From positions 124,001 through 188,000 of IMG/VR virus record IMGVR_UViG_3300020147_000065: DNA of 64,000 nt; one strand, 5' to 3'. Of this stretch, positions 31,882-64,000 are shown piece after piece. Numbering within the stretch: the stretch's first letter is position 1; the number at the start of each line of letters is the position of its first letter. The translations under genes and the position numbers were made by a program. The notes below the pieces were generated by a model that did not search any database, was not told the DNA's origin, and was given only the letters and a program-made list of their open reading frames with translations.

Positions 31882-32115
31882 CAGCTTAGCAATTCTCACA
31901 CTTGTTGTTATAGTGTGAGAACTGCCCCCCCCCCACCGCCAGCAGTTTGTAACAGCCACAAACTGATCGCGGTGGGGGAATTGTTCGCCGGCAAACATTT
32001 GCTCTGATCGCGCCTTGACATTCTGGGGTTGGTTTGGTAGGGGCCGGCATCGCGCAAAAATAATCCTTGTATGATCGTCGCGTTGTGATATACTAAGGGT
32101 AATCAGGAGGTTTCA

Positions 32116-32265
32116 ATGACTCAGAAGCACAACCCGCCGCGCGTCGTAAAGTGCGACCATTGCGGCAAACTCACGAAGCACAACCCCGTTGCATGGCAAC
32201 AACTGTGCGACAAATGCGAGGAGAAATTTGACCGCCGTCGTGCCTACAAAAACGGTTACGAGTAA
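32116..32265 (+). CDS. 49-aa zinc-finger peptide (not in ORF track)
   Basis: MTQKHNPPRVVKCDHCGK...LCDKCEE; AGGAGG SD and own promoter. Confidence 0.7.
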   Translation: MTQKHNPPRVVKCDHCGKLTKHNPVAWQQLCDKCEEKFDRRRAYKNGYE

Positions 32266-32338
32266 GGGAAAGGGGACTTGCGCCCCTTTCCTCACCCTGT
32301 TAAACTACTGTTGTTAGTTAATTTTTGGAGGTTATCCC

Positions 32339-32641
32339 ATGTCACTGTTTGAGAATCCAGTCACCGGACACATCAGCCACCCAACTGCCGGGCGCGTCGC
32401 CGTCGAGTTTGACCTACATAAAGAAAAAGACCGCGTTGTTTTGCGGTCTATTGAGGGTGAGGCTGGCGAGTGCTTTGGAGTTATTTATCTTCGCAAAACT
32501 CCAACCATCGAAATTGGACAGGGTTATTTGACTTTCAAGGGGCGCAGCGGTCATGATTTACAGGGCACCAAAAAAGTCACTTTTCCTACTCCAATAGTGG
32601 AACTGGCGAAAAAGGTGCAAGAGAGACAGGCCGCCGCGTGA
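32339..32641 (+). CDS. Paralog family A protein, copy 2
   Basis: MSLFENPVTGHI...RVAVEF...RSIEGEA; GGAGG SD. Confidence 0.75.
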   Translation: MSLFENPVTGHISHPTAGRVAVEFDLHKEKDRVVLRSIEGEAGECFGVIYLRKTPTIEIGQGYLTFKGRSGHDLQGTKKVTFPTPIVELAKKVQERQAAA

Positions 32642-32784
32642 TACTAATCGGCCTATTCCTTTTCATTGTGGCTCCCGCTTTTTATAAGCGGGAGCCAGTT
32701 TATATCGCAATTTGGGCGGTATATGTTGCACTGATAAATTGGCTCTGATATACTCAGAGAGTTGTTAAATTCTGGAGGTTTTCC

Positions 32785-33021
32785 ATGTTATTTCCACCCA
32801 TAGAACCGCAGGACGTTCCGAGCTTTGCCGAGATTTTTTCCGATGTATTGAACGCGCAGCCGGAGGGCGATGATTTGGAAGCGTGTGACGAATGGTTAAG
32901 CTGCAACGACGGCGAATGGCCGCGCAGTGTCGAAGAGTTGCGGGAATGGTGGACAGCCGAACCAGAGCCGGAATATCAGAGCGCGACCCTTGATCCTGAT
33001 TACGATGAAACTCTGAGCTGA
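32785..33021 (+). CDS. Highly acidic small protein
   Basis: 78 aa rich in D/E/W; GGAGG SD; canonical U-tailed terminator follows. Confidence 0.7.
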   Translation: MLFPPIEPQDVPSFAEIFSDVLNAQPEGDDLEACDEWLSCNDGEWPRSVEELREWWTAEPEPEYQSATLDPDYDETLS

Positions 33022-33277
33022 TATAACGGGCACTGCCAACGCGGTGCCCGTTTTTCTTTGCGCGACCATGCCGGCGAGTGTGCGCTATCTTACATAGTGG
33101 GCAGCTTGCACTTGACGTTGTGTGCAAGCTGCCCACCCCCACCACGCAGCAGAAAACAACCCTGCTGCGTGGTGATCTGTTCCCTGGCGAACATTTATTA
33201 TTTATACCCTTGCACTTGCTATTGTGGCCTGATATACTGCTATGCAGTTGTTAAATTAAGCCATCCACGGAGATATT

Positions 33278-33490
33278 ATGTTAGCCTACACAATGACCGA
33301 CGAGACGACCTACACAGTGACCCGCAACGGTTCACCCGTTGGCACAATTCGCCTTGACGGTGCCTTCTATAGCGCCTATGGTGTGCGCGATAATTTTCTT
33401 GGTTCCAGCAGCCGGAGCCTCGGAATTGAGAACGCGGTGCGTAATCAATTTGGCACCCGTCGCCCAAAGTGGGGCAGACGCGGACACTAA
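33278..33490 (+). CDS. Small hypothetical protein
   Basis: GGAG SD and TTGCAC...TATACT promoter. Confidence 0.6.
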   Translation: MLAYTMTDETTYTVTRNGSPVGTIRLDGAFYSAYGVRDNFLGSSSRSLGIENAVRNQFGTRRPKWGRRGH

Positions 33491-33567
33491 AAATATTTCG
33501 GGCGCGACCTTGCACAGAGGTTGCGCCCCTGTTATACTATTGGTATAACCAATCAGGGAGAACGAAA

Positions 33568-33690
33568 ATGTCCGACGGAAAAACGATCATCGAAGAAATT
33601 GACGAAATCGAAGAATTGGCAGCGATGGCCGACGAACACGACGCGCAAAACGAGTTCCACGATCAATTTGATGGACAGTGGAAAGTCTAA
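33568..33690 (+). CDS. 40-aa acidic peptide
   Basis: MSDGKTIIEEIDEIEELAAMADEHD...; GGGAG SD and own promoter. Confidence 0.65.
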   Translation: MSDGKTIIEEIDEIEELAAMADEHDAQNEFHDQFDGQWKV

Positions 33691-33826
33691 CAAAACGGGC
33701 CGGCCCCTACGGGGAGCCGGCCCTCACTTTATCTGCCCCCCCCCCACTCATAAAATTTTCCATAAATTACTTGTATTTATATTCTGTTATGTTATACTTT
33801 CAGTATCACAATTAGGAGGTAGCAAA

Positions 33827-34006
33827 ATGCTACTCGATTTATGGCCTTACTTAGTGGCCTCTTTTCCAATGACTGATATGCGGAATCGCATTGCACGTCA
33901 AATAATGAAAAGGGCGATGCAACCAAAGGGTCTGGATGGCACAGTGTGGGGAACACTGACAGACAAATATGTTGATAAGTCGTTCGATAGCAACGCCCGG
34001 TATTAA
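33827..34006 (+). CDS. Small hypothetical protein
   Basis: AGGAGG SD; TTGTAT-17-TATACT promoter. Confidence 0.6.
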   Translation: MLLDLWPYLVASFPMTDMRNRIARQIMKRAMQPKGLDGTVWGTLTDKYVDKSFDSNARY

Positions 34007-34212
34007 ACCGGGCGTTGTTGGTTTGTTTGCCCCCCCCACTCAAATTTAAGAAAATCTGCCCACCCCCGTGTTAATTTCTTCCCCTTTCGCTGCGCTATAA
34101 TGGAAGAAGGAAAGTCAGGGAACTGGGTCAAAAATAAAAATAAATTTGACTTTCATTTGTCCCCGTGGTCTGCTATACTAATGTTAATTCTTTTAGGAGT
34201 GAGTTTATCACC

Positions 34213-34713
34213 ATGAACACCACGTTAGTTAATCAGGCCGCCGCATTGAGCGCGAAACTCCGCAAAATCACCGGACGTTGCGGCGAAAACCATTCAGCCG
34301 ACTATTTGAATCGCGCAGAACGCGCATATTCCCGCGCGTATGACCGCGCTATGCGTCGCGCGATGGCTGCGATGCCTTCGGCTGTTCCCGGTGTTATTCC
34401 CGTTGAGGCTATCAAATTGATGTCAGCAGCGACCTATTCTGTGCCCGTCGAATCGGTTAAAATCCTCAAAATTGAGCAGATTGCAGCCGACCATCCCGAC
34501 CGCGTTATTGACCGCGCGTGGAGTGTGCGACTGTTGGGCGAACGCACGGTTCGGGCGCGTGAACTTGATGGCGAAGATTACAGCCATGTTATCACGCATA
34601 CCCACCTCGTAGAAACCCGTTATGGTCACGGTGTGCCAGAGTCCGGCAACGGTGCTTGGGGTTCGTTGTTCGGCATCACCGACAAAGGCGAATATCGCCT
34701 ATGGTGTGACTAA
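34213..34713 (+). CDS. Hypothetical protein
   Basis: Likely start MNTTLV after GGAG; promoter with CCCCGTGG spacer. Confidence 0.7.
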   Translation: MNTTLVNQAAALSAKLRKITGRCGENHSADYLNRAERAYSRAYDRAMRRAMAAMPSAVPGVIPVEAIKLMSAATYSVPVESVKILKIEQIAADHPDRVIDRAWSVRLLGERTVRARELDGEDYSHVITHTHLVETRYGHGVPESGNGAWGSLFGITDKGEYRLWCD

Positions 34714-35120: not shown

Positions 35121-35291
35121 GCCGGGTTTGCCCCCCCCACCACGATTCAAACGCCAAAAATCGTGGTGGGGCAAGTGATCGCAATGGAAGAAGGAAAGCC
35201 AGGAAATCAGGTCAAAAATAAATTCCAAAATCACTTGTGTTTACTAAACTTTTGAGTTACACTAACACTATCTTGTTTGGAGGTTTTGGTT

Positions 35292-35603: not shown

Positions 35604-35880
35604 TTTTACTTGCATTTGTTCTACTGGTAACAGCGCCCTTATTTATTGGCAAGCCTTATATTTTTTATGGTATCGTTATTCTGGTTGGTGTGCTTACCCT
35701 TTTAGGGTAGGCACATCGCCAGCGATGTGCCCCCCCCCTTGCATCACGATTGTAAAACTTCCTACTGGGGATCAAAATATGTGGAAGAAGGAAGGTCAGA
35801 AAATCAGGTCAAGAATAAAAAGATTTTTCACTTTGCCCCCCCCCCTTGTTGCCATCTTTATCATATGTAATAATTTAAGT

Positions 35881-37780: not shown

Positions 37781-37883
37781 AACCTGCGCACTTTCCTGTT
37801 GTTTGGGAAAGTGCTGCCCCCCCCCTTGCTCCCATCTTTCTTTTTGTTATACTTGTAGTATCTTAGTTAGAGAGGTTAGAGCA

Positions 37884-40003: not shown

Positions 40004-40013
40004 GGATAAAATC

Positions 40014-41420: not shown

Positions 41421-41790
41421 TTTATCACTAATCAGGGAAAGGGAAAGTCCGAAAGACTTTCCCTTTTCTTTTTTGTCTGCCCCCCCCCCTACCATCCCAC
41501 TGATAAAATCTCCCCGTGGGTGGCGATCATATGGAAGATGGAAGGCCAGTGAACCATGTCAAAAATAAAATCGAGAATCACTTTCACCTCCCCCTTGCAG
41601 CCATTGTCACACCTTGTTAAAATTTAAGGTATGAAATGGCCCAAGATAATTATCACCACGCGGAAGTATATCTACGGTATCCAATCACAAACCCATTGTC
41701 AATGGTTGGTGATGTGCATAAACAGCATCTAAGGGAGTAGATGCTGCCCCCCCCCTTGCAGCACTTTCATAAATTGCGTATAATTTAATT

Positions 41791-43087: not shown

Positions 43088-43139
43088 GTAGTTGCCCCCC
43101 CCCCTTGTCAACAGAAATTATATGGATTAAAATATAAGC

Positions 43140-43823
43140 ATGGACAAAAAGATTGATGACGTTTTAAAGTTCGACCCGATTGACACCGCAGAAAAAATGA
43201 TGGGCGGCGATAGAAGTGATGCTTCTATGTTTCTGGGCCTCGCTCTGGCAATGGAGAACAACGAACAAAAAGAGCGCGTTTTAAATGCGTCAGGCGATAC
43301 GCATTTCAGCACCACGCTTGACCAATATATTTCTATTGTTCAGGGCATCGGTTTCGAGCAGGTTTTGTGCATCCCATTTGTCGGTGAAAAGTGGGGAAAA
43401 GAAACTGCCCCACAAGAGAAATTTTTCGTTTTCTTCGATAAGTCGCGCAGCATTTTGCTTACTTTCGACACCTATAACAGCGGCAAAGTCAACGGTGGCA
43501 AGTTTCTCTATAACATCAAGCCGAACAACGAAAAAAGTTTCTATAATGTTATTTCTTCCGGTGGCTACACGAAAGACAGTGACGGCAATTATGTTTGGGT
43601 TGGTGACCATGACTGCCGCGAAGCCATCAAACACAAGATTGCACGTTTAGAAGAAAACGGGCAATTCTTAACCAAATGGTTAGAGCGCCCTTTTCTCTGG
43701 TTGCTTCATTATATGGACACCAAAGACAAGAATTATGATTATCGCGCTATCAACGCGGAACGAATTGCAATGCTGCCGGATTACGTGCAAGAAGCAATCA
43801 CACCGGCTCAGTCTTCGGACTGA
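43140..43823 (+). CDS. Cassette gene, hypothetical (227 aa, leaderless)
   Basis: TTGTCA-17-TAAAAT-6-ATG; ends in a UUCG hairpin. Confidence 0.8.
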   Translation: MDKKIDDVLKFDPIDTAEKMMGGDRSDASMFLGLALAMENNEQKERVLNASGDTHFSTTLDQYISIVQGIGFEQVLCIPFVGEKWGKETAPQEKFFVFFDKSRSILLTFDTYNSGKVNGGKFLYNIKPNNEKSFYNVISSGGYTKDSDGNYVWVGDHDCREAIKHKIARLEENGQFLTKWLERPFLWLLHYMDTKDKNYDYRAINAERIAMLPDYVQEAITPAQSSD

Positions 43824-45207: not shown

Positions 45208-45432
45208 ATGAAAATTGCTTCTGCTGCTCCGACAAACACTGGTGTAAATGTTCAGTTGTCCTCTCAGGTCGCCTACATTGGCCGCAATGCCAACATCGGG
45301 CGTCAGGCTAACATTGGCTGCAATGCCAACATCGGGCGTCAGGCTAACATTGGCCGCCCATTCAATGCTACCATGCAACAGGCCGCCGCGCATCGTCGCC
45401 GGATGATGCCCGTGCTGCGGCGCACGAAGTAA
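45208..45432 (+). CDS. Small protein with hexapeptide repeats (ANIGRQ/ANIGCN)
   Basis: 18-nt unit repeated about five times, forming a duplicated 36-nt block at 45275-45356. Confidence 0.65.
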   Translation: MKIASAAPTNTGVNVQLSSQVAYIGRNANIGRQANIGCNANIGRQANIGRPFNATMQQAAAHRRRMMPVLRRTK

Positions 45433-47309: not shown

Positions 47310-47502
47310 TTGTCAGTGAGAGAGCGCATATAGTTTGATAAAGCGTAACGTGGCTCATGGTAGGACATAGGCCCCCTGCCAGTAAGGGTTCTTCGGAATC
47401 GTATAATGAGTTCCCCCGCCTAAATGGTGTCTATTCATTTCACTGGATAGGCCCAACATGAAAGCGCAGTGGTGAGTGAAAGCATCCTTCTCTCACTGAC
47501 AA
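47310..47502 (+). ncRNA. Candidate structured non-coding RNA cassette 3
   Basis: Perfect 14-bp terminal stem TTGTCAGTGAGAGA/TCTCTCACTGACAA starting near +1 of a TTGTTC-17-TATAAT promoter; internal UUCG hairpin; no ORF. Confidence 0.7.
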
Positions 47503-47598
47503 GGTTTGGGCGTATGACCCAGTAATGAGGCGCACAGAGGCGTCTGCCCGTTGCCCCCCCCCCTTGCATTAACTAAAGAAAAGTAGGATAATAATAGT

Positions 47599-47919: not shown

Positions 47920-48183
47920 TCCGGGGCTTGCCCCCCCCCTACCTTGACACCGGCTCCCTCATATGGTAGAATTTATATTAGGAGTCTCATATGTCTTTAT
48001 TTATCGTGTTATTTGGGATAGCACTACTTTTTACGATGCCGGTTTTTGTGAATCTTAAACCACTTTATTACTTCTTATGGATGGTTGAAGCGATATTGAT
48101 ATTCACAAACTAACTCGTAAGAGTTAGTGCCCCCCCCCTTGCGGCAAATATCGCAAACATATAAAATTTAATGTGGAAGTGCT

Positions 48184-48708
48184 ATGAGAAACATTGTTTT
48201 CAGAAACAGCCTCATAAGCGAGCATCGTGCAGGACAGTTGCTTCGCAGTTGGAAAAATCAGTTACGCGGCAAGTTAAGCCCTAAAAGACGTAAAGAAGTT
48301 AACGGTTTGCTTAACGATATGCGTAAAGCATTAAAGACCGTTGGCCCCTATGAGCGCGATGGTGTGTTTACTGTCGAAGAAGTTATGGCTTTAGTGGGAA
48401 CAGGCCACGGACACGTTAATCGTCGCCCTATTTCGTATGACACTAAACGTCTAAAAGTGTTCAAGCGAACGGGCACAGTATGTGTCGCGTGTGGTTTACC
48501 TGCCTCACACTTTGCTTTAGAGCGTTGCTGGGAACAAGATGGTGATTTGTGGCACTTCAATTTGTATGGTTTGAGAGACGGTAAAGAAATTCTCTTTACT
48601 CGTGACCACATTAAACCACTTGCCAGGGGTGGAACCGATTGTCTCGATAATCAGGAAACAATGTGCTGCACTTGCAATTTCAAAAAGGGCGACAAGTGGG
48701 AAGAGTGA
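48184..48708 (+). CDS. HNH endonuclease
   Basis: CVACG...TRDHIKPLARGGTDCLDNQETMCCTCNFKKG. Confidence 0.9.
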   Translation: MRNIVFRNSLISEHRAGQLLRSWKNQLRGKLSPKRRKEVNGLLNDMRKALKTVGPYERDGVFTVEEVMALVGTGHGHVNRRPISYDTKRLKVFKRTGTVCVACGLPASHFALERCWEQDGDLWHFNLYGLRDGKEILFTRDHIKPLARGGTDCLDNQETMCCTCNFKKGDKWEE

Positions 48709-50436: not shown

Positions 50437-50525
50437 TAGATGCCCCCCCCCCTTGCTAATCAAATGACAAAAGCCTCTTCCTATGATATAATTCATCTGG
50501 AAGAGGCTTTAGTCCCGGAATTGGG

Positions 50526-51122
50526 TCATAAACTCAAGTCAAGTTTATCGTTAGCAGCCACACAATAGAATTGTGTGCCGTCAATGTTAGCAGTTCGATT
50601 AAAATGCCAATGACCAAATACCCATATTGCCGGACGGTGTATCTGTAACATGGTCATTAAAGCCAACGTGGTTTGCGTAGGCTTTACCGGCCCGTTTATC
50701 AGGCGAGGCATATTCATATGCTCGATTATACCAAACGGGGCATCGTGACTGATTACAATATCCGGCTTGGTGGCCTCATAGAGAGTAACAGCATTGGTTA
50801 AATCTTCCATGCTTAATTGCTCATCTTTCCACCAACTTATACCCTCTCTACGACGGTATTGATCTATTGACCATGCACCGGATAGAAAGAATACGCCGTG
50901 CTTGTAACCATAATCACCCAGATAAAGAGGATGGGCGCGGCACTCTTCGGGAGAATCATGATTACCACGTATGAAACCATCTATACCAGTAAAGACGGTT
51001 TCTCGATTGAAGTTACGAAAACCTAATCCCAAATCTCCCAAATGTAATGTCAAGTCTGCTTTTTCGGGATACCAAAAGCCAACCCGTTCTGCGTGAGAAT
51101 CACCAAGAAATCTATAAATCAT
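50526..51122 (-). CDS. Calcineurin-like metallophosphoesterase (inverted cassette)
   Basis: GDSH, HLGD, RGNHD, SHDAP and FGHWH motifs. Confidence 0.9.
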   Translation of the reverse strand: MIYRFLGDSHAERVGFWYPEKADLTLHLGDLGLGFRNFNRETVFTGIDGFIRGNHDSPEECRAHPLYLGDYGYKHGVFFLSGAWSIDQYRRREGISWWKDEQLSMEDLTNAVTLYEATKPDIVISHDAPFGIIEHMNMPRLINGPVKPTQTTLALMTMLQIHRPAIWVFGHWHFNRTANIDGTQFYCVAANDKLDLSL

Positions 51123-51307
51123 AAATCTACTCCTAATGTGGCTTTAACCACCATTTTGTAAATATCCATTGAGTCTAACACACCTGCCAACCAATCTACA
51201 ACCCTTTGAATGTGCTGAAACACACAAAAAGCGACATAAACCCCAACGAGTTTGTTCCTTATCCTACGTCTTAACCAACGGTAGTAAACATGGACTTTGC
51301 GACTCAT
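51119..51307 (-). CDS. Small hypothetical protein, first gene of the inverted cassette
   Basis: Minus-strand TTGCCC-17-TATACT-6-ATG. Confidence 0.65.
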   Translation of the reverse strand: MSRKVHVYYRWLRRRIRNKLVGVYVAFCVFQHIQRVVDWLAGVLDSMDIYKMVVKATLGVDL

Positions 51308-51391
51308 GCTCTAAGTATACCAAAAAGCTATCCACGGGGCAAGGTCTGCCCCCCCCTTGCATTTAGATACGATTTAGAGTATCCTTTAATC

Positions 51392-53541: not shown

Positions 53542-53781
53542 TCAGGGATAGGCCAGTGCCGGCGCTCCCTGAGTAAAGTAACGGAGTTTCTCTATTCCTT
53601 CAAACCTTACTTCCAATACTTCTGCACCACTTTTACCGTCTTTACCGTATCGCTTGACAGAAACAATCTCGCCTGGTGTGTTTTCAGGGACTTCTACCGT
53701 CTTCATATCGAGTCCCAATAACTCCATGCGAGCAACGATCTTATCACCCTGTTTGAAATTAACGTCCTCTGTAAATTGCAT
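53542..53781 (-). CDS. SH3-like small protein in an inverted cassette
   Basis: Minus-strand TTGACT-CCCCGTGG spacer-TATACT-6-ATG (MQFTEDVNFKQGDKIV). Confidence 0.7.
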   Translation of the reverse strand: MQFTEDVNFKQGDKIVARMELLGLDMKTVEVPENTPGEIVSVKRYGKDGKSGAEVLEVRFEGIEKLRYFTQGAPALAYP

Positions 53782-53867
53782 GATATTAGTATATAGCCAA
53801 CCACGGGGGTTAGTCAATGCCCCCCCCCCCATTGCACACTCTAAACAATAGCGGTAAAATATATTCC

Positions 53868-54290
53868 ATGAGCAAAACAAAAGTAACCCCGAACAGCGTA
53901 GCATTCAGCGCGTTGCAGGAAGTTGTCAAAGTTGGTAACACGAAACTGAAAGTTCTTTTCGTTGCCGAACGCGGCGTCCACGGTGCCGAAACCTACTGGA
54001 ACGACGAAATGCGCGGCAATGTCGGCAAAGAACTGACCGTGAGAGATTCCGACGCGAGCAGCAACGAATTTCAGCTTTCCGACGATTTCTGGTATCCTGC
54101 AATCTCCTTGTTTGCTGAACCCAAACAGCCGGTAGAAGTGTCGCTGCCTGATTACACGGCGACGGTGTATCCTACCCATCTCCAAGTTGGTTATCAGGAA
54201 ATCACCAAAGAAATGGTTCTGGCAATCGTCAAGGGTGGACTGGATACGGGCTTCCTCTCCACATCAGATTTGGAGGGTCTGAATAAATAA
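53868..54290 (+). CDS. Paralog family C protein, copy 1
   Basis: GxHG...W...M...G...WYPAxxL and LPDYTA...VGxQxxTKEMxLxIV...GF motifs. Confidence 0.85.
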   Translation: MSKTKVTPNSVAFSALQEVVKVGNTKLKVLFVAERGVHGAETYWNDEMRGNVGKELTVRDSDASSNEFQLSDDFWYPAISLFAEPKQPVEVSLPDYTATVYPTHLQVGYQEITKEMVLAIVKGGLDTGFLSTSDLEGLNK

Positions 54291-54375
54291 GCCCCGGCTC
54301 CCTTCGGGGAGCTTTGCCCCCCCTTGCGCACAGCTCTAATCTTCTGTATAATTATTAGTAATAAGGAGGCCAACG

Positions 54376-54645
54376 ATGCCTAAATCAATGTTTCGTCCAT
54401 CGGATGTAATGGACAACGCGCATTTCAATGACCACACTAAGGTCTTGACTGTGACGTTTCAGAGTGGTTCGGTTTACGAGTATGAGAATGTGCCTGAGCG
54501 CGTTTTCAATCGTTTAAACGCCGCTCCTTCTAAGGGACAGTTCTTTAATCAGAACATCCGTAATAAATACGCATTTAAGTGTGTGTTTAAACCCGCTAAG
54601 ACAACTACAGCGCCGCAGGTTCAGCCCGTGGCTGTCACTGTCTAA
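54376..54645 (+). CDS. KTSC domain protein
   Basis: LTVTFQSGSVYEYENVPERVFNRLNAAPSKGQFFNQNIRNKY; AAGGAGG SD. Confidence 0.9.
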   Translation: MPKSMFRPSDVMDNAHFNDHTKVLTVTFQSGSVYEYENVPERVFNRLNAAPSKGQFFNQNIRNKYAFKCVFKPAKTTTAPQVQPVAVTV

Positions 54646-54742
54646 TGTTCCTCCTTACCGGGAAACGGAGGCTTCCGGGCCTCCGTTTCTTCGGTCTGCC
54701 CCCCCCTTGTCACAAGTAAATTAAAACGATATAATCTATTAC

Positions 54743-55159
54743 ATGAGTGAAACAAACAACGTGAACATTGCTGAACTGAGCCTGAACCAAATTGCATTCT
54801 TAAAGCTCGGCCTCAAAGAAGGCGACACCGTAAAGGTTGTTGCTAAAGTGCCAGAAGGCACACACGGTTCTGATATTTACTGGGAAACGAGTATGACCCG
54901 TAAAATCGGTAAAACCCAACGAGTAGTAGGTGCGCGGAACCATAGCCGAATCGAACTCGAAGATGGGTATTACTACCCTGCCCTCGCGCTGGAAAAAGTG
55001 AAAGTTGTCAAGGAAATTCGGCTCCCTGACTACACCGCTTTAGTCAGCGAAGATGGTGTATCCGTGGGTTGCCAAAACCTCACCAAAGAAATGGTGTTGG
55101 GTATCGTAAAAGCCGCAGTGGAAACGAACTTCATTTCACAGGAGGACTTGGAGTTCTAA
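54743..55159 (+). CDS. Paralog family C protein, copy 2
   Basis: Family C motifs. Confidence 0.85.
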   Translation: MSETNNVNIAELSLNQIAFLKLGLKEGDTVKVVAKVPEGTHGSDIYWETSMTRKIGKTQRVVGARNHSRIELEDGYYYPALALEKVKVVKEIRLPDYTALVSEDGVSVGCQNLTKEMVLGIVKAAVETNFISQEDLEF

Positions 55160-55233
55160 GCCGGGAGCCGTCGAAAGACGGCGACCTGCCCCCCCCCTTG
55201 TCACTACTCAAGAATAACAGTAAAATATATTCC

Positions 55234-55653
55234 ATGAGTGATAAAGTAAAGACAATGAATGATGTGGCTTTCGAGTTTCTCAATGAGAAATTCAAAGTTG
55301 GCGACAAAGTGCGAGTCACCATGCGGGTTGACTCTGGTGTGCAGGGTAATCGAATTGACTGGCTTGAGGGAATGGAAGAGGCTCTCAATTCGGGACTTCA
55401 CACTATTCTGGATACCAACGAGTCGTATGGTGCGTTCCGACTGAGTTGTGGTTACTGGTTCCCGGCGTTGGCAATCAGCTCTGATGTTGGTAAAGTCACT
55501 GTCAAACTGCCCGACTACACAGCCGAAATCACCAAAGAAAAAGTCAACGTAGGTTGTCAAGTTCTGACAAAAGAGATGATTCTCAGTATCGTAAAGGCCG
55601 CAGTGGACACCGGCTTTTTAAATGAGGAGGATATTGCCTCACTTAAAGGTTAA
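55234..55653 (+). CDS. Paralog family C protein, copy 3
   Basis: Family C motifs; leaderless MSDKVK. Confidence 0.85.
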   Translation: MSDKVKTMNDVAFEFLNEKFKVGDKVRVTMRVDSGVQGNRIDWLEGMEEALNSGLHTILDTNESYGAFRLSCGYWFPALAISSDVGKVTVKLPDYTAEITKEKVNVGCQVLTKEMILSIVKAAVDTGFLNEEDIASLKG

Positions 55654-55732
55654 GCGGCGGGGAGCTGCCTTCAGGCAGCGACCTCTTGCCCCCCCCTTGC
55701 ACTAACCAACTAAAAACGATAGAATATATTCC

Positions 55733-56158
55733 ATGAGTGATACAACAGCAAAGACGGTTAATGATGCAGCGTTTGAGATTCTCAGCGCAACGGTCAAAGA
55801 AGGCAGCAAGGTTCGCGTAATTCTTCGTATCCCAAAAGGTATGCATGGAAGCCGCATCTCATGGGTTGACTCGATGGACGGAAACGTGGGCGTCGGTATC
55901 CACACTGTAACCGATGTAAGCCCTCGCTACGGTGCTTTCGAGTTGGACAACGAAAAGTGGTATCCTGCGGTTGCTCTTTCGGCGGACGCGGAAACCGTTC
56001 GCGTCGCGCTCCCTGACTACGAAGCAGAAATTACCAAAGATGGTATCGTAGTCGCGGGGCAGAACCTCACCAAAGAGATGGTTCTCGGCATCGTGCAGGG
56101 TGCGCTCGACACCGGATTCCTTGATAAAGGAGATGTAGCCACTATTAAGACTTCCTAA
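55733..56158 (+). CDS. Paralog family C protein, copy 4
   Basis: Family C motifs. Confidence 0.85.
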   Translation: MSDTTAKTVNDAAFEILSATVKEGSKVRVILRIPKGMHGSRISWVDSMDGNVGVGIHTVTDVSPRYGAFELDNEKWYPAVALSADAETVRVALPDYEAEITKDGIVVAGQNLTKEMVLGIVQGALDTGFLDKGDVATIKTS

Positions 56159-56238
56159 GCAACGGGGAGCCATCCACGGGTGGCGACCTTTTGCCCCCCC
56201 CCTTGCACCAAAATAAGATAAGCGGTATAATTTATTAC

Positions 56239-56676
56239 ATGAGCGATACACAAACAACCCCCGAACTGACCGTGAACCAAGCCGCATTTAATGTTTTAAA
56301 TGCGAAAGTGACCGAAGGCGACAAGATTCGCGTCGTCCTCAAAGTGCCTATTACCGTGCATGGTAGTGATGTGAACTGGGTCGAAGAGATGGACAACACC
56401 ATCAACAAAACGCTTCGCGTTCGCCGCGTTGACGCAAGCAATGGTTCTTTCTATCTCAGCAACGGCTACTGGTATCCTGCCGTGGCACTCTCCACCGAAG
56501 TAGCAAAAATCACCGTGCCGCTGCCGGATTACACGGCGGAAATCACCAAAGAACAGGTCAACGTCGGCTGCCAGATTTTGACCAAAGAAATGATTCTCGG
56601 CATCGTGCAAGGCGCGTTGGATGTAGGGTTTCTGAGCGAAGAGGATGTGAACCGCCTCGACACCAGAGAAGTATAA
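56239..56676 (+). CDS. Paralog family C protein, copy 5
   Basis: Family C motifs; leaderless MSDTQT. Confidence 0.85.
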   Translation: MSDTQTTPELTVNQAAFNVLNAKVTEGDKIRVVLKVPITVHGSDVNWVEEMDNTINKTLRVRRVDASNGSFYLSNGYWYPAVALSTEVAKITVPLPDYTAEITKEQVNVGCQILTKEMILGIVQGALDVGFLSEEDVNRLDTREV

Positions 56677-56750
56677 CCGGGTGGACTCTTCGGAGTCCAC
56701 CCTGCCCCCCCCCCTTGCGCTGATAGAATTTAAACAGTATAATTTATTCC

Positions 56751-57167
56751 ATGAGTGAAACAAGAAAGACGGTTAATGACGCGGCGTTTGAAATCCTCAA
56801 CGCACAGTTGAACATTGGTGATAGAGTTCGTATTGTCGCCAAAATTGATGAGGGTGTCCACGGCAGCAAGACTGTTTGGACATCTCGCATGAATGATAGT
56901 GTGGGTCAGTTTATGACTATTCGCGGTGTTGAACCTGAGTATGGTGCTTTTCAGTTGGATAACTATTACTGGTATCCTGCCGTGGCACTCGATACTCAGG
57001 TGCATAAAGTGACGGTTAATCTGCCGGATTATTGCGCTGAAATCACCAAAGAAGGGGTGAACGTGGGTTGTCAGAACCTCACCAAAGAAATGATTCTGCA
57101 AATCGTGCAGGGCGCGTTAGACGTGGGTTTTCTCGATGCCGAGGACATCGAAAGTCTGAAAGTATAA
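56751..57167 (+). CDS. Paralog family C protein, copy 6
   Basis: Family C motifs. Confidence 0.85.
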   Translation: MSETRKTVNDAAFEILNAQLNIGDRVRIVAKIDEGVHGSKTVWTSRMNDSVGQFMTIRGVEPEYGAFQLDNYYWYPAVALDTQVHKVTVNLPDYCAEITKEGVNVGCQNLTKEMILQIVQGALDVGFLDAEDIESLKV

Positions 57168-57244
57168 GCGGCGGGGAGCTATCGAAAGATAGCGACCTTG
57201 CCCCCCCCTTGGCAACACTCAATATAAACAGTAAAATATAAGAC

Positions 57245-57643
57245 ATGAACATGAACCAAGCAGCATTCGAGACGTTGAAGGAAACGCGCGGCATCGGTGA
57301 CAAAGTGAAGGTTGTCCTGCAAGTGGACAAAGGTGTGCATGGAAACCTCTTCCGTTGGGATTCCGGTATGACCGAACAAATCGGAAAAGTCTTGACAATC
57401 AAAGAGTTCGATTCTTCGGACAACACCATCCTGCTGTCAGATAGCCGTTATTATCCCGCACTCGCTTTGATGAGCGACAACGGCCCCATTATCGTGGAAT
57501 TGCCCGATTACAAGGCAGAAATCCACGCTGACCGTGTGCAAGTTGGTTGTCAGTGCCTCACCAAACAGATGGTGTTGGACATCGTGAAGGGTGCAGTATC
57601 TGTCGGGTTTATGAGCGAATCAGATTTGGAGGGTCTGCGATAA
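57245..57643 (+). CDS. Paralog family C protein, copy 7
   Basis: Family C motifs. Confidence 0.85.
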   Translation: MNMNQAAFETLKETRGIGDKVKVVLQVDKGVHGNLFRWDSGMTEQIGKVLTIKEFDSSDNTILLSDSRYYPALALMSDNGPIIVELPDYKAEIHADRVQVGCQCLTKQMVLDIVKGAVSVGFMSESDLEGLR

Positions 57644-57720
57644 GCCCCCGCGGACTCTTCGGAGTCCGCCTTGCCCCCCCCCCTTGCACAAGGTTCAAAT
57701 TAAGGGGTATAATTTATTCC

Positions 57721-58137
57721 ATGAGCAAACAAAAGACGTTACACGACATTGCATTTGAAGAACTGGGCATCGAAGAGGGCGACTTCGCTAAAGTCGTCCT
57801 TAAAGTGGACGAAGACGTTCACGGTAACCCGCTCCGTTGGTCGCATGGTATGGAAGAAATGTTAGGTAAGACATTTCGCGTCACCAACATTGATACCAGC
57901 GACAACACAATCGAACTGAACAACGGCGAATGGTTCTCGGCTATTTCGCTCGAAAAGGCAACCGGCGAAATCAAGGTGCAATTACCGGATTACACCGCAG
58001 TCGTAACCAAAGAAGGCATGGAAGTTGGTTGCCAGAAACTCGACAAAGACAAGGTTTTGGAAATCGTTCAGGCTGCAATCACCACCGGTATGATTGACCG
58101 CGATGATGTCGAAGACCTCGACTATCACGACGACTAA
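57721..58137 (+). CDS. Paralog family C protein, copy 8
   Basis: Family C motifs; leaderless MSKQKT. Confidence 0.85.
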   Translation: MSKQKTLHDIAFEELGIEEGDFAKVVLKVDEDVHGNPLRWSHGMEEMLGKTFRVTNIDTSDNTIELNNGEWFSAISLEKATGEIKVQLPDYTAVVTKEGMEVGCQKLDKDKVLEIVQAAITTGMIDRDDVEDLDYHDD

Positions 58138-60601: not shown

Positions 60602-61258
60602 ATGAATCGAGATTACCCACCGGCACCATATCGTTGCGAAATTGTTTGTTCTGATGATTTGCGCGTATCTGCTGAACTTGATAAAACTACAATCAATATC
60701 AGCTATCGTTTACATCACATCGCAACATATGAAAATGGGAGCCGTGATTTTTCTTTTATTCGCCGTGTGCCTACAATCGGTGAATTTATTGATATTATCC
60801 ACGAATACCCTTGCGAGTTACGAGATGATATTAACGACGGAAAACTCGCATCTCATGTGTTAGGTGGAATCTTTATATTTGAGAATCCACAAACTAAAGA
60901 TTCTTTTGTATCATTCGCTCCCCTCAATGCCGAGACACTATATGAGCAAACAGCTAATGCTGTTCATTATGCTTCATTTGGTAGTGTAATTGAAGGTGAA
61001 GCTAATCGCGCATGGCGAGATAAGTTTGTGCAAGTAGCTGTCCTCGATCATAACGGCAACGGTTATAGCGTGTTAAGTAATAATCCTTTAGTTCCCGATG
61101 TTTGGTTTAATTCGGTTCGCCGCCGAACATTAAATCGCGCTGAGGCCGAAGAGCGTGTTCGCCGCATCTGTGCTGATAATCGTGATGTAGTTGTGCGCTG
61201 GTGCCCAACTAATAACCTGCCACCGGACTGGTGTAATGAGCGCACGAAGATTATATAA
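60602..61258 (+). CDS. Cassette gene, hypothetical
   Basis: TTGCGA-CCCCGTGG spacer-TAAAAT then MNRDYPP. Confidence 0.75.
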   Translation: MNRDYPPAPYRCEIVCSDDLRVSAELDKTTINISYRLHHIATYENGSRDFSFIRRVPTIGEFIDIIHEYPCELRDDINDGKLASHVLGGIFIFENPQTKDSFVSFAPLNAETLYEQTANAVHYASFGSVIEGEANRAWRDKFVQVAVLDHNGNGYSVLSNNPLVPDVWFNSVRRRTLNRAEAEERVRRICADNRDVVVRWCPTNNLPPDWCNERTKII

Positions 61259-61327
61259 TCTTCGTGTTGCCCCCCCCCTTGCACCACCTAAACAACGGAG
61301 TTAAAATCTTTAGTGAAAGGAACAGAC

Positions 61328-61528
61328 ATGGCATCTGACATCACCAAAGAACAAAAACGGGCATATCGGCAAATGGGGCGCGAAGATGGACGCGCAGGGC
61401 GTTCCGCCTCAGAGTTCCACAACACACCACACGAATTGGTTCAAGCGTATAACTCCGGTCATAAATCCGGTAAACGCACACTGGAAAACGAAAAGGCACA
61501 GCGCGACTATGAATTAAGCAAGTGGTAA
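61328..61528 (+). CDS. Small hypothetical protein
   Basis: AAGGA SD; AYxxGxxDG/AYxxG motifs. Confidence 0.6.
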   Translation: MASDITKEQKRAYRQMGREDGRAGRSASEFHNTPHELVQAYNSGHKSGKRTLENEKAQRDYELSKW

Positions 61529-61749
61529 CGCCTTGACAGCACCTCTTAAACCTGTTATAATAAGAGTATGATATTCTTATGGGTAGGGGTGCTTTTCTTG
61601 GCTCCATTGTTTTGCATGGGGAATAAGACTGCCCTCGGTGTAATTTACGGTGCATTTGCCTTGTGGTTATTGTATAATGGAGTATGCTAACCACGGGGCA
61701 GGTGCCCCCCCCCCTTGATTAATGTAAAACAATTGATTAAAATAAAAGT

Positions 61750-62187
61750 ATGATTTCAGAAAAAGCGCGAGTGCTGAATTTACTTTTAGAACGTAATGAG
61801 GTATCAAAAATTGACTTTGAATTAGGTGGAGAAATCATTATAACTCTTTCCCCTAAGCTTACAAAGTTACAAGAACACAAAAAGATGCGAGAAAAGAAAT
61901 ATTCTGAATCAGAAATTGGTGCATCGGTGGACGAGCGTGTTCGAGAAGTTTTATTGAAAGATAAACCAATGACTATACCTGAGATAACAGCAGCAGTAGG
62001 CTGCTGTTATCAGAGGGCAAAAACCGCAATAGATGCGGCAACAATACACGGTGTTATTAATATCGTTGAATGTCGCACTGGTGAATTAAGAGGAAAACTC
62101 CCTCATCTTCATCAAATTACCGAAGACGGAAAGAAAAAATTAAACGAGGAAAGGTGGTGGATTTACCTCAAGAAACCTAAAAATTAG
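61750..62187 (+). CDS. Winged-HTH-like DNA-binding protein
   Basis: VREVLLKDKPMTIPEITAAVG...HQITEDGKKKL pattern. Confidence 0.55.
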   Translation: MISEKARVLNLLLERNEVSKIDFELGGEIIITLSPKLTKLQEHKKMREKKYSESEIGASVDERVREVLLKDKPMTIPEITAAVGCCYQRAKTAIDAATIHGVINIVECRTGELRGKLPHLHQITEDGKKKLNEERWWIYLKKPKN

Positions 62188-62240
62188 GTTTCTTGCCCCC
62201 CCCCTTGCACGACCATAATAAAAGAGGTAGAATAATTACT

Positions 62241-62504
62241 ATGAATCCATTCAACACACGACTGTTCAGCGCAACCCGCGAGAAAATCAACGAATTTCTC
62301 TATGCTCGGCTATCGAATCCCGAAAATCCGAATAACGGCGAAGAAACACATCGTTACCACGGAAGCACCTTAAAACAGCGCAAGCGTCGCCTGTCTCACA
62401 CAAATCCGGCATCGCATCACTATGCGAACTACACGAAGCGCAAGCGTCGCCAGAAACACGCGCGTAAGATGTTGGCAAAGCAACGCGCGGCGGCTGTTGC
62501 ATAA
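62241..62504 (+). CDS. Basic small protein
   Basis: Leaderless MNPFNT; RKRR clusters. Confidence 0.6.
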   Translation: MNPFNTRLFSATREKINEFLYARLSNPENPNNGEETHRYHGSTLKQRKRRLSHTNPASHHYANYTKRKRRQKHARKMLAKQRAAAVA

Positions 62505-62576
62505 GTTCGCTCTCCGCTCCGGCGGAGAGCTTGCCCCCCCCTTGCATCCTTATAACTTCTGAGTTATATTTTAAGT

Positions 62577-63383
62577 ATGCAATTCAGAATCCTTGACCCT
62601 CAAACGGACGGCGGCGGAGTCCTTCACATAACAGCGACCGGCACAGAAGAAATAAAGGCCGTGTTTGGTGTTTTTCATTGGCGGGACGAATCAACGGAAA
62701 CCCTTAAAGCGCGTGTCACCGCTTTAGAATCCGGCCAATATAGCCTGATTTGCAACGATAAACGGAAATGGTATCGCAATGAAGTCGAATTGTCTGCCGA
62801 TTGGGTTAGCCCATATATCGAAGAGTTGCAAAAACGAACGGGCTACAGTGGCGAACTTCCCGAACTCGATTTAATTGATTGTGTAAAGCGTATAACGCAC
62901 ACACATTTAATCGAATCTGTAAAACTCACAGACGGTAAATTGTCTGCGGTGATTTATGTAAAATCAGAAGATTACGCCGGTAAACCGGCTGTTGACCGTT
63001 CGCGCTGGTATTCGCGGGAATGTCTCGGAAACGACTTCGGGGCAACGCCTGTGCATAGTGAATATATCGAAACGAGCGCCGGAAACTACCGTAAAAATCC
63101 AGCGTGGGGACACTACCACAAACCGCGCCCCGCTTTAGCTAACGCGGCATTTTTCAACAAATTGTTTAAGTGGTGGCGGGATAACCACGCAACCGACTTA
63201 CAAAAAGACTTATTAGAACGCGGCCTAAAATATGGCCTCTATTCTAATAACTGGTTAATGACACAGGGGCACCAACAATGCGTGGATTTAGGGCACGGCG
63301 GTTTCCGAATCACACCGAACGGCAACGGGCCTGACAGCTATAAATTTATGAGTTGGGAACAGTTCCGCGCGGTGGCTACGTAG
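62577..63383 (+). CDS. Cassette gene, hypothetical (268 aa)
   Basis: Leaderless behind TTGCAT-17-TATATT. Confidence 0.75.
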   Translation: MQFRILDPQTDGGGVLHITATGTEEIKAVFGVFHWRDESTETLKARVTALESGQYSLICNDKRKWYRNEVELSADWVSPYIEELQKRTGYSGELPELDLIDCVKRITHTHLIESVKLTDGKLSAVIYVKSEDYAGKPAVDRSRWYSRECLGNDFGATPVHSEYIETSAGNYRKNPAWGHYHKPRPALANAAFFNKLFKWWRDNHATDLQKDLLERGLKYGLYSNNWLMTQGHQQCVDLGHGGFRITPNGNGPDSYKFMSWEQFRAVAT

Positions 63384-63437
63384 CCACCGCTTGCCCCCCC
63401 CTTGCAGAGATTAAACTAATTTGCGATAATATATTAC

Positions 63438-64000
63438 ATGAAATGGATTAAAGAGAAGTGGAAAGCCTTCCTCGCCCTGCTTAACGGTCAAGTTCACCGT
63501 TACCCCAATGCCGACGCTCCCGCCAACATGGAAAAGAGCGACACCTGCCCTGCCGCAACTCTTGGTTGTAATTCGCGCGACTATGTAAGCGGCAAATCTT
63601 ATCCGCCGCGTGGTAGTGTGGCCCGTTCTGCTGCCGAAAAGAAACCTCTACCACCTGAGCGCAAATTAAGTCAGACACCATACAGCGGTTATGTGGTTGA
63701 TTCCGCGCCTCTCTCAATACCTTTCGTGCCTGAACCGACCTTTCAGCCATATCTTGACCCCATTGGCACCGAAAAGCTGTTGGAGGAAATTGATAAGATA
63801 ATCTATCAGCCGACTGATTCAACTGCTGATGAAATGCGGGATAGTTATTCGCCACCCACGGTGGAAATACCGACTTATTCGGCTCCCGAACCTGTTTCGA
63901 CACCAACTTTTGAATCCAGAAGCAGCGATTTTGGAGGCGGCGAATCCGGTGGAGGCGGAGCATCTGCTACATGGGACAGTTCACCTTCGGATAGTGGATC
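63438..64000 (+). CDS. Pro/Ser-rich protein with FGGGESGGGGASATW motif, partial
   Basis: Leaderless MKWIKEKWKAF; open to the right edge. Confidence 0.65.
   Translation, partial: MKWIKEKWKAFLALLNGQVHRYPNADAPANMEKSDTCPAATLGCNSRDYVSGKSYPPRGSVARSAAEKKPLPPERKLSQTPYSGYVVDSAPLSIPFVPEPTFQPYLDPIGTEKLLEEIDKIIYQPTDSTADEMRDSYSPPTVEIPTYSAPEPVSTPTFESRSSDFGGGESGGGGASATWDSSPSDSG

What the first reader, a model, noticed from the sequence alone, without database searches (positions are those of the whole stretch)
31924..64000. About 70 self-contained expression cassettes joined by a G-C(7-10) delimiter: a candidate gene-cassette shuffling array in a phage
Seen: roughly every 200-900 bp the same junction recurs: unique hairpin, (TT)G-C7-10, TTGnnn, ~17 nt, TAnnnT, ~6 nt, ATG. 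Payloads are mostly unrelated single genes, short operons or RNAs. The motif is absent from the 29-kb structural half. Known: promoter-repeat-delimited early gene regions exist in some large phages (e.g. PeSL elements of T4-like phages, the SPO1 host-takeover region) and integrons use hairpin attC sites. I know no case using a homopolymer C-run on this scale. Inference: the junction is a recombination or insertion site that lets complete promoter-gene-hairpin units be gained, lost, duplicated or reordered.
Basis: partly seen in the sequence, partly recalled or inferred. Interest (0 to 1): 0.93.

Follow-up and report, generated by a model that had tools for sequence, protein, structure and literature searches.

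The report
C-tract-delimited leaderless gene cassettes, jumbo phage
An uncultivated 221-kb phage separates about 100 small early transcription units with the same compact junction (RNA hairpin, a run of 7-11 C, a sigma-70-type promoter whose start site is the ATG itself); this is a real and unusual piece of gene-expression punctuation, but its proposed role as a gene-shuffling site is unproven.

Summary
G-C7+ occurs 73 times in the window against about 1.3 expected, with 71 runs on the + strand from 31925 to 64000. The window is bases 124001-188000 of a 221,108-bp metagenomic phage contig. The junction continues to the contig end and restarts at its beginning (98 runs in the 106 kb I could read).

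Typical anatomy is a unique G+C-rich hairpin rich in UUCG/GNRA loops, then TG, C7-11, TTGC/Tnn, 16-18 nt, TAnAAT, 6-7 nt and ATG. All 54 such starts have a pyrimidine at -1. They are therefore predicted leaderless mRNAs.

A relative with 65% capsid identity keeps hairpin plus C9-16, but often with 20-150 nt between the run and the promoter. I therefore read the run as a boundary element between transcription units.

The recombination reading could not be tested, because no close relative exists in any collection searched. The indirect signs are:
- eight tandem paralogs, each with its own junction;
- two inverted modules lying between C-runs;
- almost complete turnover of gene content between the two lineages.

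The closest known system is the PeSL promoter-terminator cassettes of T4-like phages. I rate this a new variant of that kind.

The parts
31925..64000 (+). Dense array of 71 C7-11 runs delimiting about 70 co-oriented transcription units. It continues beyond the window.
56679..56753 (+). Exemplar junction: hairpin 56679-56702 (UUCG loop), TG 56703-56704, C10 56705-56714, -35 TTGCGC 56715-56720, 17-nt spacer, -10 TATAAT 56738-56743, 7 nt, ATG 56751 (predicted +1).
   Evidence: read directly from the sequence
30131..30137 (-). Minus-strand C7 run at the head of the leftward (- strand) small-gene series, next to the divergence point at about 30140-30200.
30513..30520 (-). Run in reverse orientation (G8 on the + strand) directly after the hairpin of the + strand gene 30239-30478.
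30840..30850 (-). Run in reverse orientation (G11 on the + strand) directly after the hairpin of the + strand gene 30618-30803.
32020..33700 (+). Five early units with TTGnnn-N17-TATACT promoters, Shine-Dalgarno leaders and no long C-run. This is a different promoter flavour at the left edge of the early region.
31925..31978 (+). Run without an adjacent promoter: the last Cs of C10 pair with a downstream G5 in a second hairpin. The same design occurs at 35131-35172.
53868..58137 (+). Eight tandem paralogous cassettes (132-145 aa, 41-57% identical to the first), each with its own hairpin, C-run and leaderless promoter. The family is found nowhere else.
53543..53822 (-). Inverted leaderless cassette filling the space between + strand runs 53532 and 53820. 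Its promoter (TTGACT-N18-TATACT) abuts the complement of run 53820.
50473..51347 (-). Inverted two-gene unit (a leaderless small ORF plus a 198-aa metallophosphatase-like gene, 43% identical to a relative's early gene). It lies between run 50443, which keeps TTGCTA but has no -10, and run 51349.
48130..48708 (+). Cassette carrying an HNH endonuclease.
43095..43823 (+). Cassette with a 227-aa protein of phrog_36907, the only widely distributed payload found. Its homologs in 29 other viral contigs sit in regions without C-run arrays.

Best explanation
The junction is transcriptional punctuation. Each unit of this phage's early region consists of a C-tract, a sigma-70-type promoter, one or a few ORFs, and an RNA hairpin.

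Shown from sequence:
- In just over half of the junctions the promoter places the predicted transcription start on the A of the ATG. The mRNA is then leaderless and can be translated only from its own promoter's transcript.
- The hairpin works at the RNA level (UUCG/GNRA loops, compensatory changes) and is not a canonical U-tract terminator.
- The C-tract is an independent module that marks the boundary. It sits just after the 3' end of the upstream unit and ahead of everything belonging to the next unit.

Inferred: the C-tract acts in cis on RNA polymerase or RNA arriving from upstream, as an insulator or terminator. The most concrete candidate is loading of a poly(C)-preferring factor such as Rho, with the hairpin protecting the mature 3' end. 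This would keep about 100 units autonomous. In this phage the tract is also fused to a degenerate -35 (TTGC/T), so it forms the upstream edge of the promoter as well.

Inferred, not shown: because about 100 co-oriented junctions share 13-20-nt identical stretches, they will also favour cassette loss, duplication and exchange by recombination. That is a by-product of the kind demonstrated for PeSLs.
For: Promoter and leaderless geometry: in 106 kb of the genome there are 98 runs. 95 are preceded by TG, 77 are followed at once by TTG, 69 have a full -35/-10, and 54 have an ATG 5-8 nt after the -10. All 54 have C or T at -1 and A at +1, and 53 of 54 sit 6-7 nt from the -10.

Hairpins: mean dG is -15.8 against -6.8. 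36 of 71 have tetraloops, including 8 UUCG and 8 GNRA. Among the 8 paralogs all cells pair, and 4 of 6 stem pairs carry changes on both sides. Canonical terminators are not enriched (29 against 22 expected), and none of the + strand junction hairpins is called as one.

Coupling to transcription: the complete junction lies on the - strand ahead of - strand genes at contig 197142, 197880 and 200060.

Boundary position: in the 65%-capsid relative, 14 distinct junctions have the C9-16 run 0-4 nt after a hairpin or just after the stop codon. The promoter follows at 0 to about 100 nt, with operator-like boxes or other elements in between. In the window phage, 21 of 98 runs have no adjacent TTG, and those examined mostly follow a hairpin.

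Selection on each copy: run lengths are bimodal and there are no decayed copies.

Leaderless promoters without a run carry a TTGAC-type -35 (TTGACA in 10 of 16) and lack an upstream hairpin. TTGAC occurs in 2 of 52 run promoters against 12 of 16 others (p = 2e-8), and upstream dG is -15.9 against -7.0. This fits internal promoters where read-through is tolerated.
Against: No expression data exist, and every functional step is inferred.

From established knowledge, an rC:dG hybrid stabilises elongation complexes, and known Rho loading sites are far longer than 7-16 nt.

Two runs (30513, 30840) are inverted relative to the genes they follow. Two inverted cassettes (53543-53822, 50473-51347) sit between + oriented runs. 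An RNA-level poly(C) signal cannot work in those cases.

The zero spacing to -35 in 77 of 98 junctions, together with the mutual exclusion with TTGACA, fits a promoter-recognition role equally well. Seven runs in the window have a promoter but no hairpin.
Confidence: 0.55

Rival explanations
1. The C-tract is mainly a promoter-recognition element. Together with TTGC/T it replaces the consensus -35. It would be read by the host holoenzyme's sigma region 4 or alpha subunit, or by a phage activator or sigma-appropriation factor (as the MotA box is in T4 middle promoters). It would define a temporal class distinct from the TTGACA promoters.
For: Spacing to TTG is zero in 77 of 98 runs. There is strong mutual exclusion with a TTGAC-type -35 (2 of 52 against 12 of 16, p = 2e-8). 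Seven runs have a promoter but no hairpin. A run heads the first - strand unit, where there is no upstream gene (30131). In the relative, the two junctions with a directly abutting run also have TTGCGC or TTGCAC.
Against: In the relative most runs lie 7 to about 100 nt from the -35, at distances that do not keep helical phase (7, 19, 28, 37, 58, 82, 99 and 103 nt). In the window phage 21 of 98 runs have no adjacent TTG. The exclusion with TTGACA is confounded with the presence of a hairpin.
Confidence: 0.2
2. One reading: the C-run (with or without the hairpin) is a dedicated recombination or insertion site, integron-like or an actively processed PeSL-like linker, and this is what it is selected for.
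For: Eight tandem paralogs each carry their own junction. Two inverted modules lie between consecutive runs, one of them exactly so. One orphan run is followed by TTGCTA and no -10 beside an inserted module. Only 3-4 weak matches link 36 early proteins of the relative to the window phage, and their order and strand differ, while the junction grammar is kept. The flanks are uniform within a genome but differ between genomes (TG in the window phage, GCA in the relative), as in concerted evolution. PeSLs set a precedent (PMC2839356, PMC4122927).
Against: No breakpoint could be mapped. No integrase, annealase or HUH enzyme was seen in the 106 kb read, but 115 kb remains unread. The hairpins are unique, perfect and RNA-type, with no conserved core sites. 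Every cassette has its own promoter. Sister-sample contigs of the relative show the same cassette order at 99.8% identity. There are no recent duplicates: the junction-repeat families are 60-94% identical and paralog genes give no DNA-level match. Keeping about 100 perfect runs intact implies selection on each copy, which a benefit to evolvability alone explains poorly.
Confidence: 0.12
3. The runs are hypermutable contingency tracts whose length changes switch or tune the expression of individual cassettes (phase variation).
For: Run length varies from 7 to 11 here and 9 to 16 in the relative. Lengths at the same locus differ by 1-3 between sister-sample assemblies.
Against: The run lies outside the -35/-10 spacer, so length changes do not alter promoter geometry. 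The differences between samples lie within the homopolymer error of short-read sequencing, and contigs break there with poly-G junk.
Confidence: 0.05
4. The runs are a DNA-level signal unrelated to transcription (strand-specific nicking, priming, packaging or modification site), or an assembly artefact.
For: There is a strong strand bias (92 of 98 runs on one strand).
Against: The full junction flips with gene direction. The runs lie between called genes, at promoters or gene ends. The same contig is present in two collections, and the motif recurs in an independent relative from other samples, so it is not an artefact.
Confidence: 0.03

Closest known systems
PeSLs (promoter-early stem-loops) of T4-like phages (Arbiol et al. 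2010, PMC2839356; Comeau et al. 2014, PMC4122927)
   Same: Small composite motifs combine a sigma-70-like early promoter with a stem-loop. They are repeated between ORFan genes in a hyperplastic region, and each cassette is transcriptionally autonomous. G/C tracts are associated with the stem-loop (PeSL stems often contain GGGG...CCCC).
   Different: Here a single-stranded-type homopolymer C7-11 (C9-16 in the relative) stands between the hairpin and the -35, where PeSLs have an A/T-rich region. The hairpins are all different. About half the units are leaderless. The scale is about 100 junctions, 70 of them contiguous. The phage is not T4-like (capsid match is phrog_3990, at most 25% identity to actinophage capsids). 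Recombination at the motif and mini-circles were shown for PeSLs but are untested here.
Morons of lambdoid phages and host-takeover early modules such as that of SPO1 (own knowledge)
   Same: These are single genes carrying their own promoter and terminator, or clusters of strong host-sigma early promoters driving small ORFan genes.
   Different: Those have no shared delimiter sequence. They use ordinary Shine-Dalgarno leaders and U-tract terminators, and they number in the handfuls rather than about 100.
Integron cassette arrays (own knowledge)
   Same: Both are tandem arrays of unrelated small genes separated by hairpin-forming sites.
   Different: Integron cassettes are mostly promoterless. 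Their attC sites have conserved core sites and extrahelical bases and are read as folded single-stranded DNA by an adjacent IntI integrase. None of these features is seen here.
Rho-dependent terminators whose mature 3' ends are trimmed back to a U-tract-less hairpin, and poly(C) as the preferred Rho ligand (own knowledge)
   Same: A stable hairpin without a U-tract is followed by C-rich, G-free RNA, and the downstream RNA is untranslated in read-through transcripts.
   Different: Known loading sites are about 60-80 nt of mixed C-rich sequence, not a 7-16-nt homopolymer.
T4 middle promoters (MotA box plus sigma appropriation) and phase-variable poly-C promoter tracts of Bordetella and Neisseria (own knowledge)
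   Same: In T4 middle promoters a good -10 is combined with a non-consensus -35 replaced by a class-specific upstream box. In the Bordetella and Neisseria cases a homopolymer sits at a promoter.
   Different: The box here is a homopolymer of variable length. In the phase-variable cases the tract lies within the promoter, so its length sets the spacing, which is not so here.

Membership tests
PeSL-type regulatory cassette | Strong sigma-70-like early promoter within the repeated motif | tested here: met
   69 of 98 junctions have TTGnnn-N16-18-TAnnnT, with -10 mostly TATAAT, TAAAAT or TAGAAT. This is a sequence match only; activity is untested.
PeSL-type regulatory cassette | Adjacent stable stem-loop | tested here: met
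   About 60 of 71 runs have a hairpin ending 0-4 nt upstream. Mean dG is -15.8 against -6.8, and the stems covary among paralogs.
PeSL-type regulatory cassette | The stem-loop is an effective transcription terminator | not testable with these tools
   The junction hairpins lack U-tracts and are not called by the terminator scan.
PeSL-type regulatory cassette | Motifs flank ORFans in a hyperplastic region | tested here: met
   Of 57 cassette proteins, Pfam hits only HNH, KTSC and two DUFs, and the PHROGs matches other than HNH have no known function. Only 3-4 weak matches link 36 early proteins of the relative to the window phage.
PeSL-type regulatory cassette | Indel or replacement breakpoints between close relatives fall in the motif; mini-circles form | not testable with these tools
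   No relative closer than 65% capsid identity exists in any collection, and no reads are available.
Integron | attC sites with conserved core sequences | tested here: not met
   The hairpins are unique, perfect, and rich in tetraloops. Nothing is conserved except TG plus the C-run.
Integron | Promoterless cassettes expressed from a common Pc promoter | tested here: not met
   Nearly every cassette has its own promoter.
Integron | Adjacent tyrosine recombinase IntI | tested here: inconclusive
   None was found in the 106 kb read. 115 kb of the contig could not be read.
Leaderless mRNA genes | Start codon at the transcription start, with no room for a Shine-Dalgarno sequence | tested here: met
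   54 junctions have an ATG 5-8 nt (53 of 54 at 6-7 nt) after the -10. All 54 have a pyrimidine at -1 and A at +1. 52 open ORFs of 40 aa or more. The start sites are predicted, not mapped.
Canonical intrinsic (Rho-independent) terminator | G+C-rich hairpin followed directly by a U-tract | tested here: not met
   Terminator-like sites number 29 against 22 expected, and none is a + strand junction hairpin in 44-64 kb. A minority of junctions, for example 41480, 34030 and several in the sparse region, do have T-tracts.

The most novel reading that the evidence does not exclude
The homopolymer C-tract is the recognition or crossover site of an active cassette-exchange system in a virulent jumbo phage. 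This would be an integron-like 'expression-cassette library' in which complete promoter-gene-hairpin units are excised, inverted and inserted at C-runs by a phage enzyme. It would explain the modules inverted between runs, the tandem family expansion, and the turnover of payloads around a conserved delimiter.
Probability: 0.1. Interest if true: 0.9.

Novelty: new variant of a known kind. Interest (0 to 1): 0.66.

Why it matters
If the reading is right, this phage lineage runs about 100 early genes as separate one-gene transcription units. Its punctuation uses two features not described for phages, as far as I could find in the literature searches: a homopolymer C-tract at every unit boundary, and leaderless mRNAs on a large scale.

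This would provide a compact natural promoter/insulator part that can be tested directly in reporter assays. It would raise the question of which host or phage factor reads a C-tract. It would also offer a clean system for asking whether regulatory linkers drive ORFan turnover outside the T4-like phages.

The leaderless design means that read-through RNA cannot express the next gene. That is a neat way to make each cassette's output depend only on its own promoter.

Tried and rejected
- Close relatives for breakpoint mapping. I searched GenBank phages with DNA and protein, IMG/VR with DNA patterns and proteins, the JGI metagenome contigs with a protein profile and a junction pattern, and GTDB genomes with the junction pattern. 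Only the source contig itself and one lineage at 65% capsid identity turned up.
- The 61 metagenome and 44 genome single hits to the junction pattern are unrelated single promoters, near the number expected by chance. They give no clue to the host.
- The relative's array is fragmented, because its assemblies break at C13-16 runs and end in poly-G junk. Walking along it recovered about 8 kb. The sister-sample contigs are 99.8% identical with the same gene order, so they yield no polymorphism.
- DNA-level boundaries of dispersed paralogs (31006/32339/35292 and 43874/46939): there is no nucleotide similarity left.
- Rfam found nothing at gathering or E<=1 thresholds. There are no tRNAs. ORF-poor cassettes fold no better than shuffles (z = +1.5, -1.4, -1.9).
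- The eight-paralog family has no homolog outside this contig. Its AlphaFold model (pLDDT 82.6) has a small beta-barrel core with only weak SH3-like matches and no functional call.
- Rejected: assembly artefact (the same motif appears in an independent relative), replication-strand signal (the junction flips with gene direction), and integron membership.

Full report
WHAT IS THERE. The motif G-C7+ occurs 73 times in the window against 1.3 expected. Seventy-one runs of C7-11 lie on the + strand from 31925 to 63401, with a median spacing of 401 nt. Three more lie on the - strand at 30131, 30513 and 30840. There is none in the structural half: 1-29000 has no C or G run above 6. That half encodes a major head protein (18066-19190), a terminase large subunit (22183-24930), a ParB-like protein and an endonuclease. 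The C-run lengths are bimodal. The background stops at 5, no run has 6, and 71 runs have 7-11. There are practically no interrupted copies.

SOURCE. The window is bases 124001-188000 of IMGVR_UViG_3300020147_000065, also held as Ga0196976_1000013, a contig of 221,108 bp. Pieces outside the window show the dense array running to about 193 kb. After that the same junction heads longer operons up to the contig end, and again at contig positions 3083 and 3817. In the 106 kb I could read there are 98 runs. Of these, 95 are preceded by TG, 77 are followed at once by TTG, 69 have a full -35/-10, and 54 have an ATG 5-8 nt after the -10.

JUNCTION ANATOMY. The consensus is tTG-C(7-11)-TTGC-N17-TAaAAT-N6/7-ATG. 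In all 54 leaderless-type junctions the base before the ATG is a pyrimidine (C in 37, T in 17), and 53 of 54 have the A 6-7 nt after the -10. This is the geometry and the Y(-1)R(+1) rule expected if the A of the ATG is the transcription start. These genes are therefore predicted to be leaderless. The other units have 20-30-nt leaders with GGAG-type Shine-Dalgarno sequences.

Upstream, about 60 of 71 runs have a strong hairpin ending 0-4 nt before the run (mean dG -15.8 against -6.8 kcal/mol). Thirty-six of the 71 loops are tetraloops, including 8 UUCG and 8 GNRA. Across the eight paralogous cassettes the 6-bp stem is paired in all cells, and 4 of the 6 pairs changed on both sides. I chose those hairpins by eye, which flatters that count. 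The hairpins lack U-tracts: a canonical terminator scan finds 29 sites against 22 expected, and none of them is a + strand junction hairpin. I conclude that the hairpins act in RNA, but not as textbook intrinsic terminators.

WHICH NEIGHBOUR THE C-RUN BELONGS TO. Within this phage the run is coupled to both neighbours. Leaderless promoters preceded by a run have TTGC/Tnn. Leaderless promoters without a run have TTGACA or a near variant (TTGAC in 2 of 52 against 12 of 16, Fisher p = 2e-8), and they also lack an upstream hairpin (dG -15.9 against -7.0). The two associations are therefore confounded.

Both kinds of natural exception exist. Seven runs have a promoter but no hairpin, with the upstream stop codon abutting the run. 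Twenty-one runs have no adjacent TTG, and those I examined mostly follow a hairpin. Some of these follow a canonical hairpin plus T-tract, as at 41480 and contig 195770. In others the run pairs into a second hairpin, as at 31925 and 35131.

The complete junction flips to the - strand ahead of - strand genes at contig 197-200 kb. This rules out a replication-strand signal. However, two runs (30513, 30840) are inverted behind + strand genes. Two inverted cassettes (53543-53822 and 50473-51347) also sit between + oriented runs.

THE RELATIVE. The closest capsid in 5.8 billion proteins is 65% identical (P0003). It lies on a 150-kb JGI contig with 38% G+C. Its early region also has C-runs, here of C9-16. 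Assemblies from six sister samples break at these runs and end in poly-G junk. Walking recovered 14 distinct junctions.

In each of these junctions the run follows a hairpin by 0-4 nt or follows the stop codon directly, and it is preceded by (G/C/T)CA rather than TG. The next promoter (TTGACA or TTGCAC, N17, TATACT or TAAACT, then a Shine-Dalgarno leader) lies 0 to about 100 nt further on. The gap is filled by a conserved 25-nt operator-like box, by a TTGTCAA...TATTTACT motif, or by a purine-rich element. Only two junctions have the run abutting the -35, and those two have TTGCGC and TTGCAC.

Across the family, then, the constant feature is a C-run at the 3' boundary of the preceding unit, ahead of all regulatory DNA of the next unit. 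That is why I favour a boundary or insulator role over a pure promoter element, while treating the promoter reading as a serious rival. Both are inferences.

PAYLOADS AND TURNOVER. Of 57 cassette proteins, Pfam recognises only HNH, KTSC and two DUFs. The PHROGs hits other than HNH have no known function. The sparser part of the region encodes a PARP-like protein, a macro domain protein, an ATP-dependent DNA ligase, two GP88-family proteins and a DUF2828/DUF7788 protein.

Eight tandem paralogs (53868-58137) are found nowhere else. A two-gene module occurs three times (31006, 32339, 35292), and the pair 43874/46939 is dispersed. No nucleotide similarity survives among these dispersed copies. The junction-repeat families are 60-94% identical over 30-55 nt, with exact stretches of only about 13-20 nt.

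Only 3-4 weak matches link 36 early proteins of the relative to the window phage, and they differ in order and strand. The 227-aa phrog_36907 protein is widespread, but its other hosts have no C-run arrays.

THE SHUFFLING HYPOTHESIS. PeSLs are the established precedent. They are composite sigma-70 promoter plus stem-loop motifs flanking ORFans. Recombination between them explains the indels between RB49 and phi1 and produces mini-circles (PMC2839356; PMC4122927).

The present array has the sequence-level features of that kind, but the decisive features (breakpoints at the motif, circles) cannot be tested with the data available. Several things are consistent with cassette-wise change. One is the family expansion, in which each paralog carries its own junction. 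Another is an inverted leaderless gene lying between runs 53532 and 53820, and a third is an orphan 'C10-TTGCTA' beside an inserted, inverted two-gene unit. The payloads have also turned over around a conserved grammar, and the flanks are uniform within a genome but differ between lineages.

Several observations count against a dedicated recombination function. The hairpins are RNA-type and unique. Every cassette has its own promoter. There are no recent duplicates. The relative's sister samples show identical order. About 100 undecayed homopolymers imply selection on each copy. No recombinase appeared in the 106 kb read, but 115 kb is unread.

VERDICT. The best reading is a lineage-specific transcription-unit delimiter, which is a new variant of the PeSL/moron type of autonomous early cassette. 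Its two unusual features are the C-tract and leaderless expression on a large scale. The gene-shuffling role is plausible as a by-product and unproven as a function.

Noticed in passing
window, 40 sites, e.g. 36748, 37421, 42725, 44293, 47284, 52773, 53148, 58188, 60577; reverse copies at 51332, 53801, 61691: The motif CCCCGTGG(T/A)T(T/G)G occurs 40 times (core CCCGTGG) against 5.5 expected. In about 16 promoters, of both the C-run and the non-C-run class, it fills the spacer just upstream of the -10, the classical operator position. Twelve copies lie in the structural half.
   Followed up: partly
window 34099-34138, 35183-35222, 35780-35819, 41530-41569; relative L333 about 2180-2260 and 2990-3060: A conserved purine-rich element of about 40-55 nt (TGGAAGAAGGAAAG...CAGGTCAAAAATAAA) sits between a C-run and the next promoter. 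It is not in a consistent reading frame. A related GTGGAAGAG...AAAAATAA element occupies the same position in the relative. It could be a small RNA or a protein-binding site.
   Followed up: partly
window 37817-37880; L100, L333, L365: The 5' leader TATACT-N5-GTATCTTAGTTAG(A/G)GAGG-N-ATG is conserved between the window phage and the relative with 65% capsid identity, although the genes behind it are unrelated.
   Followed up: partly
window 53868-58137: Eight tandem paralogs (132-145 aa) have no homolog outside this contig. The AlphaFold model (pLDDT 82.6) shows an SH3-like small beta-barrel flanked by helices, with only weak fold matches.
   Followed up: yes
L240 518-1831 and 6816-7391; L288 8579-9748; L240 3653-5134; L250 2050-2778 and 5934-6623: The sparser continuation of the early region encodes a WGR-PARP_reg-PARP protein, a macro domain protein, an ATP-dependent DNA ligase, a DUF2828/DUF7788 protein and two GP88-family proteins. 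Several are expressed from C-run or TTGACA leaderless promoters.
   Followed up: partly
L100 end, L102, L103, L333 end: Assemblies of the relative from six sister samples all break at its C13-16 runs and end in poly-G or mixed G/C junk. Run lengths at one locus differ by 1-3 between samples. The array of that lineage is therefore systematically under-assembled in public data.
   Followed up: partly
L091 3207-6992: The relative's terminase gene is 1261 aa with weak intein and LAGLIDADG hits, against 915 aa in the window phage (22183-24930). It is probably an intein-containing terminase.
   Followed up: no
window 4481-12094 (-): A 2537-aa ORF in the structural module, followed by an endonuclease-like gene (12416-13213, phrog_4645). 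It was not characterised.
   Followed up: no
window 45275-45346: An 18-nt (six-codon) period repeat, seen as three overlapping 36-nt copies at 18-nt spacing, lies inside the small gene 45208-45432 (repeat family D20).
   Followed up: no
window 47311-47553: This ORF-poor cassette has a predicted 19-bp stem, extending a 15-nt complementary segment (UGUCAGUGAGAGAG...), that closes roughly its first 190 nt. The overall z-score is only -1.4 and there is no Rfam match. It may be a non-coding RNA.
   Followed up: partly
L251 295-400 (Ga0180007_10006875); L284: Unrelated metagenome contigs carry single copies of the same design (hairpin, T-rich stretch, CTG, C8-14, TTGnnn-N17-TATAAT, leaderless ATG). 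Many single hits have perfect TTGACA/TATAAT promoters. Whether a C-tract upstream of leaderless promoters is a wider phenomenon was not resolved.
   Followed up: partly
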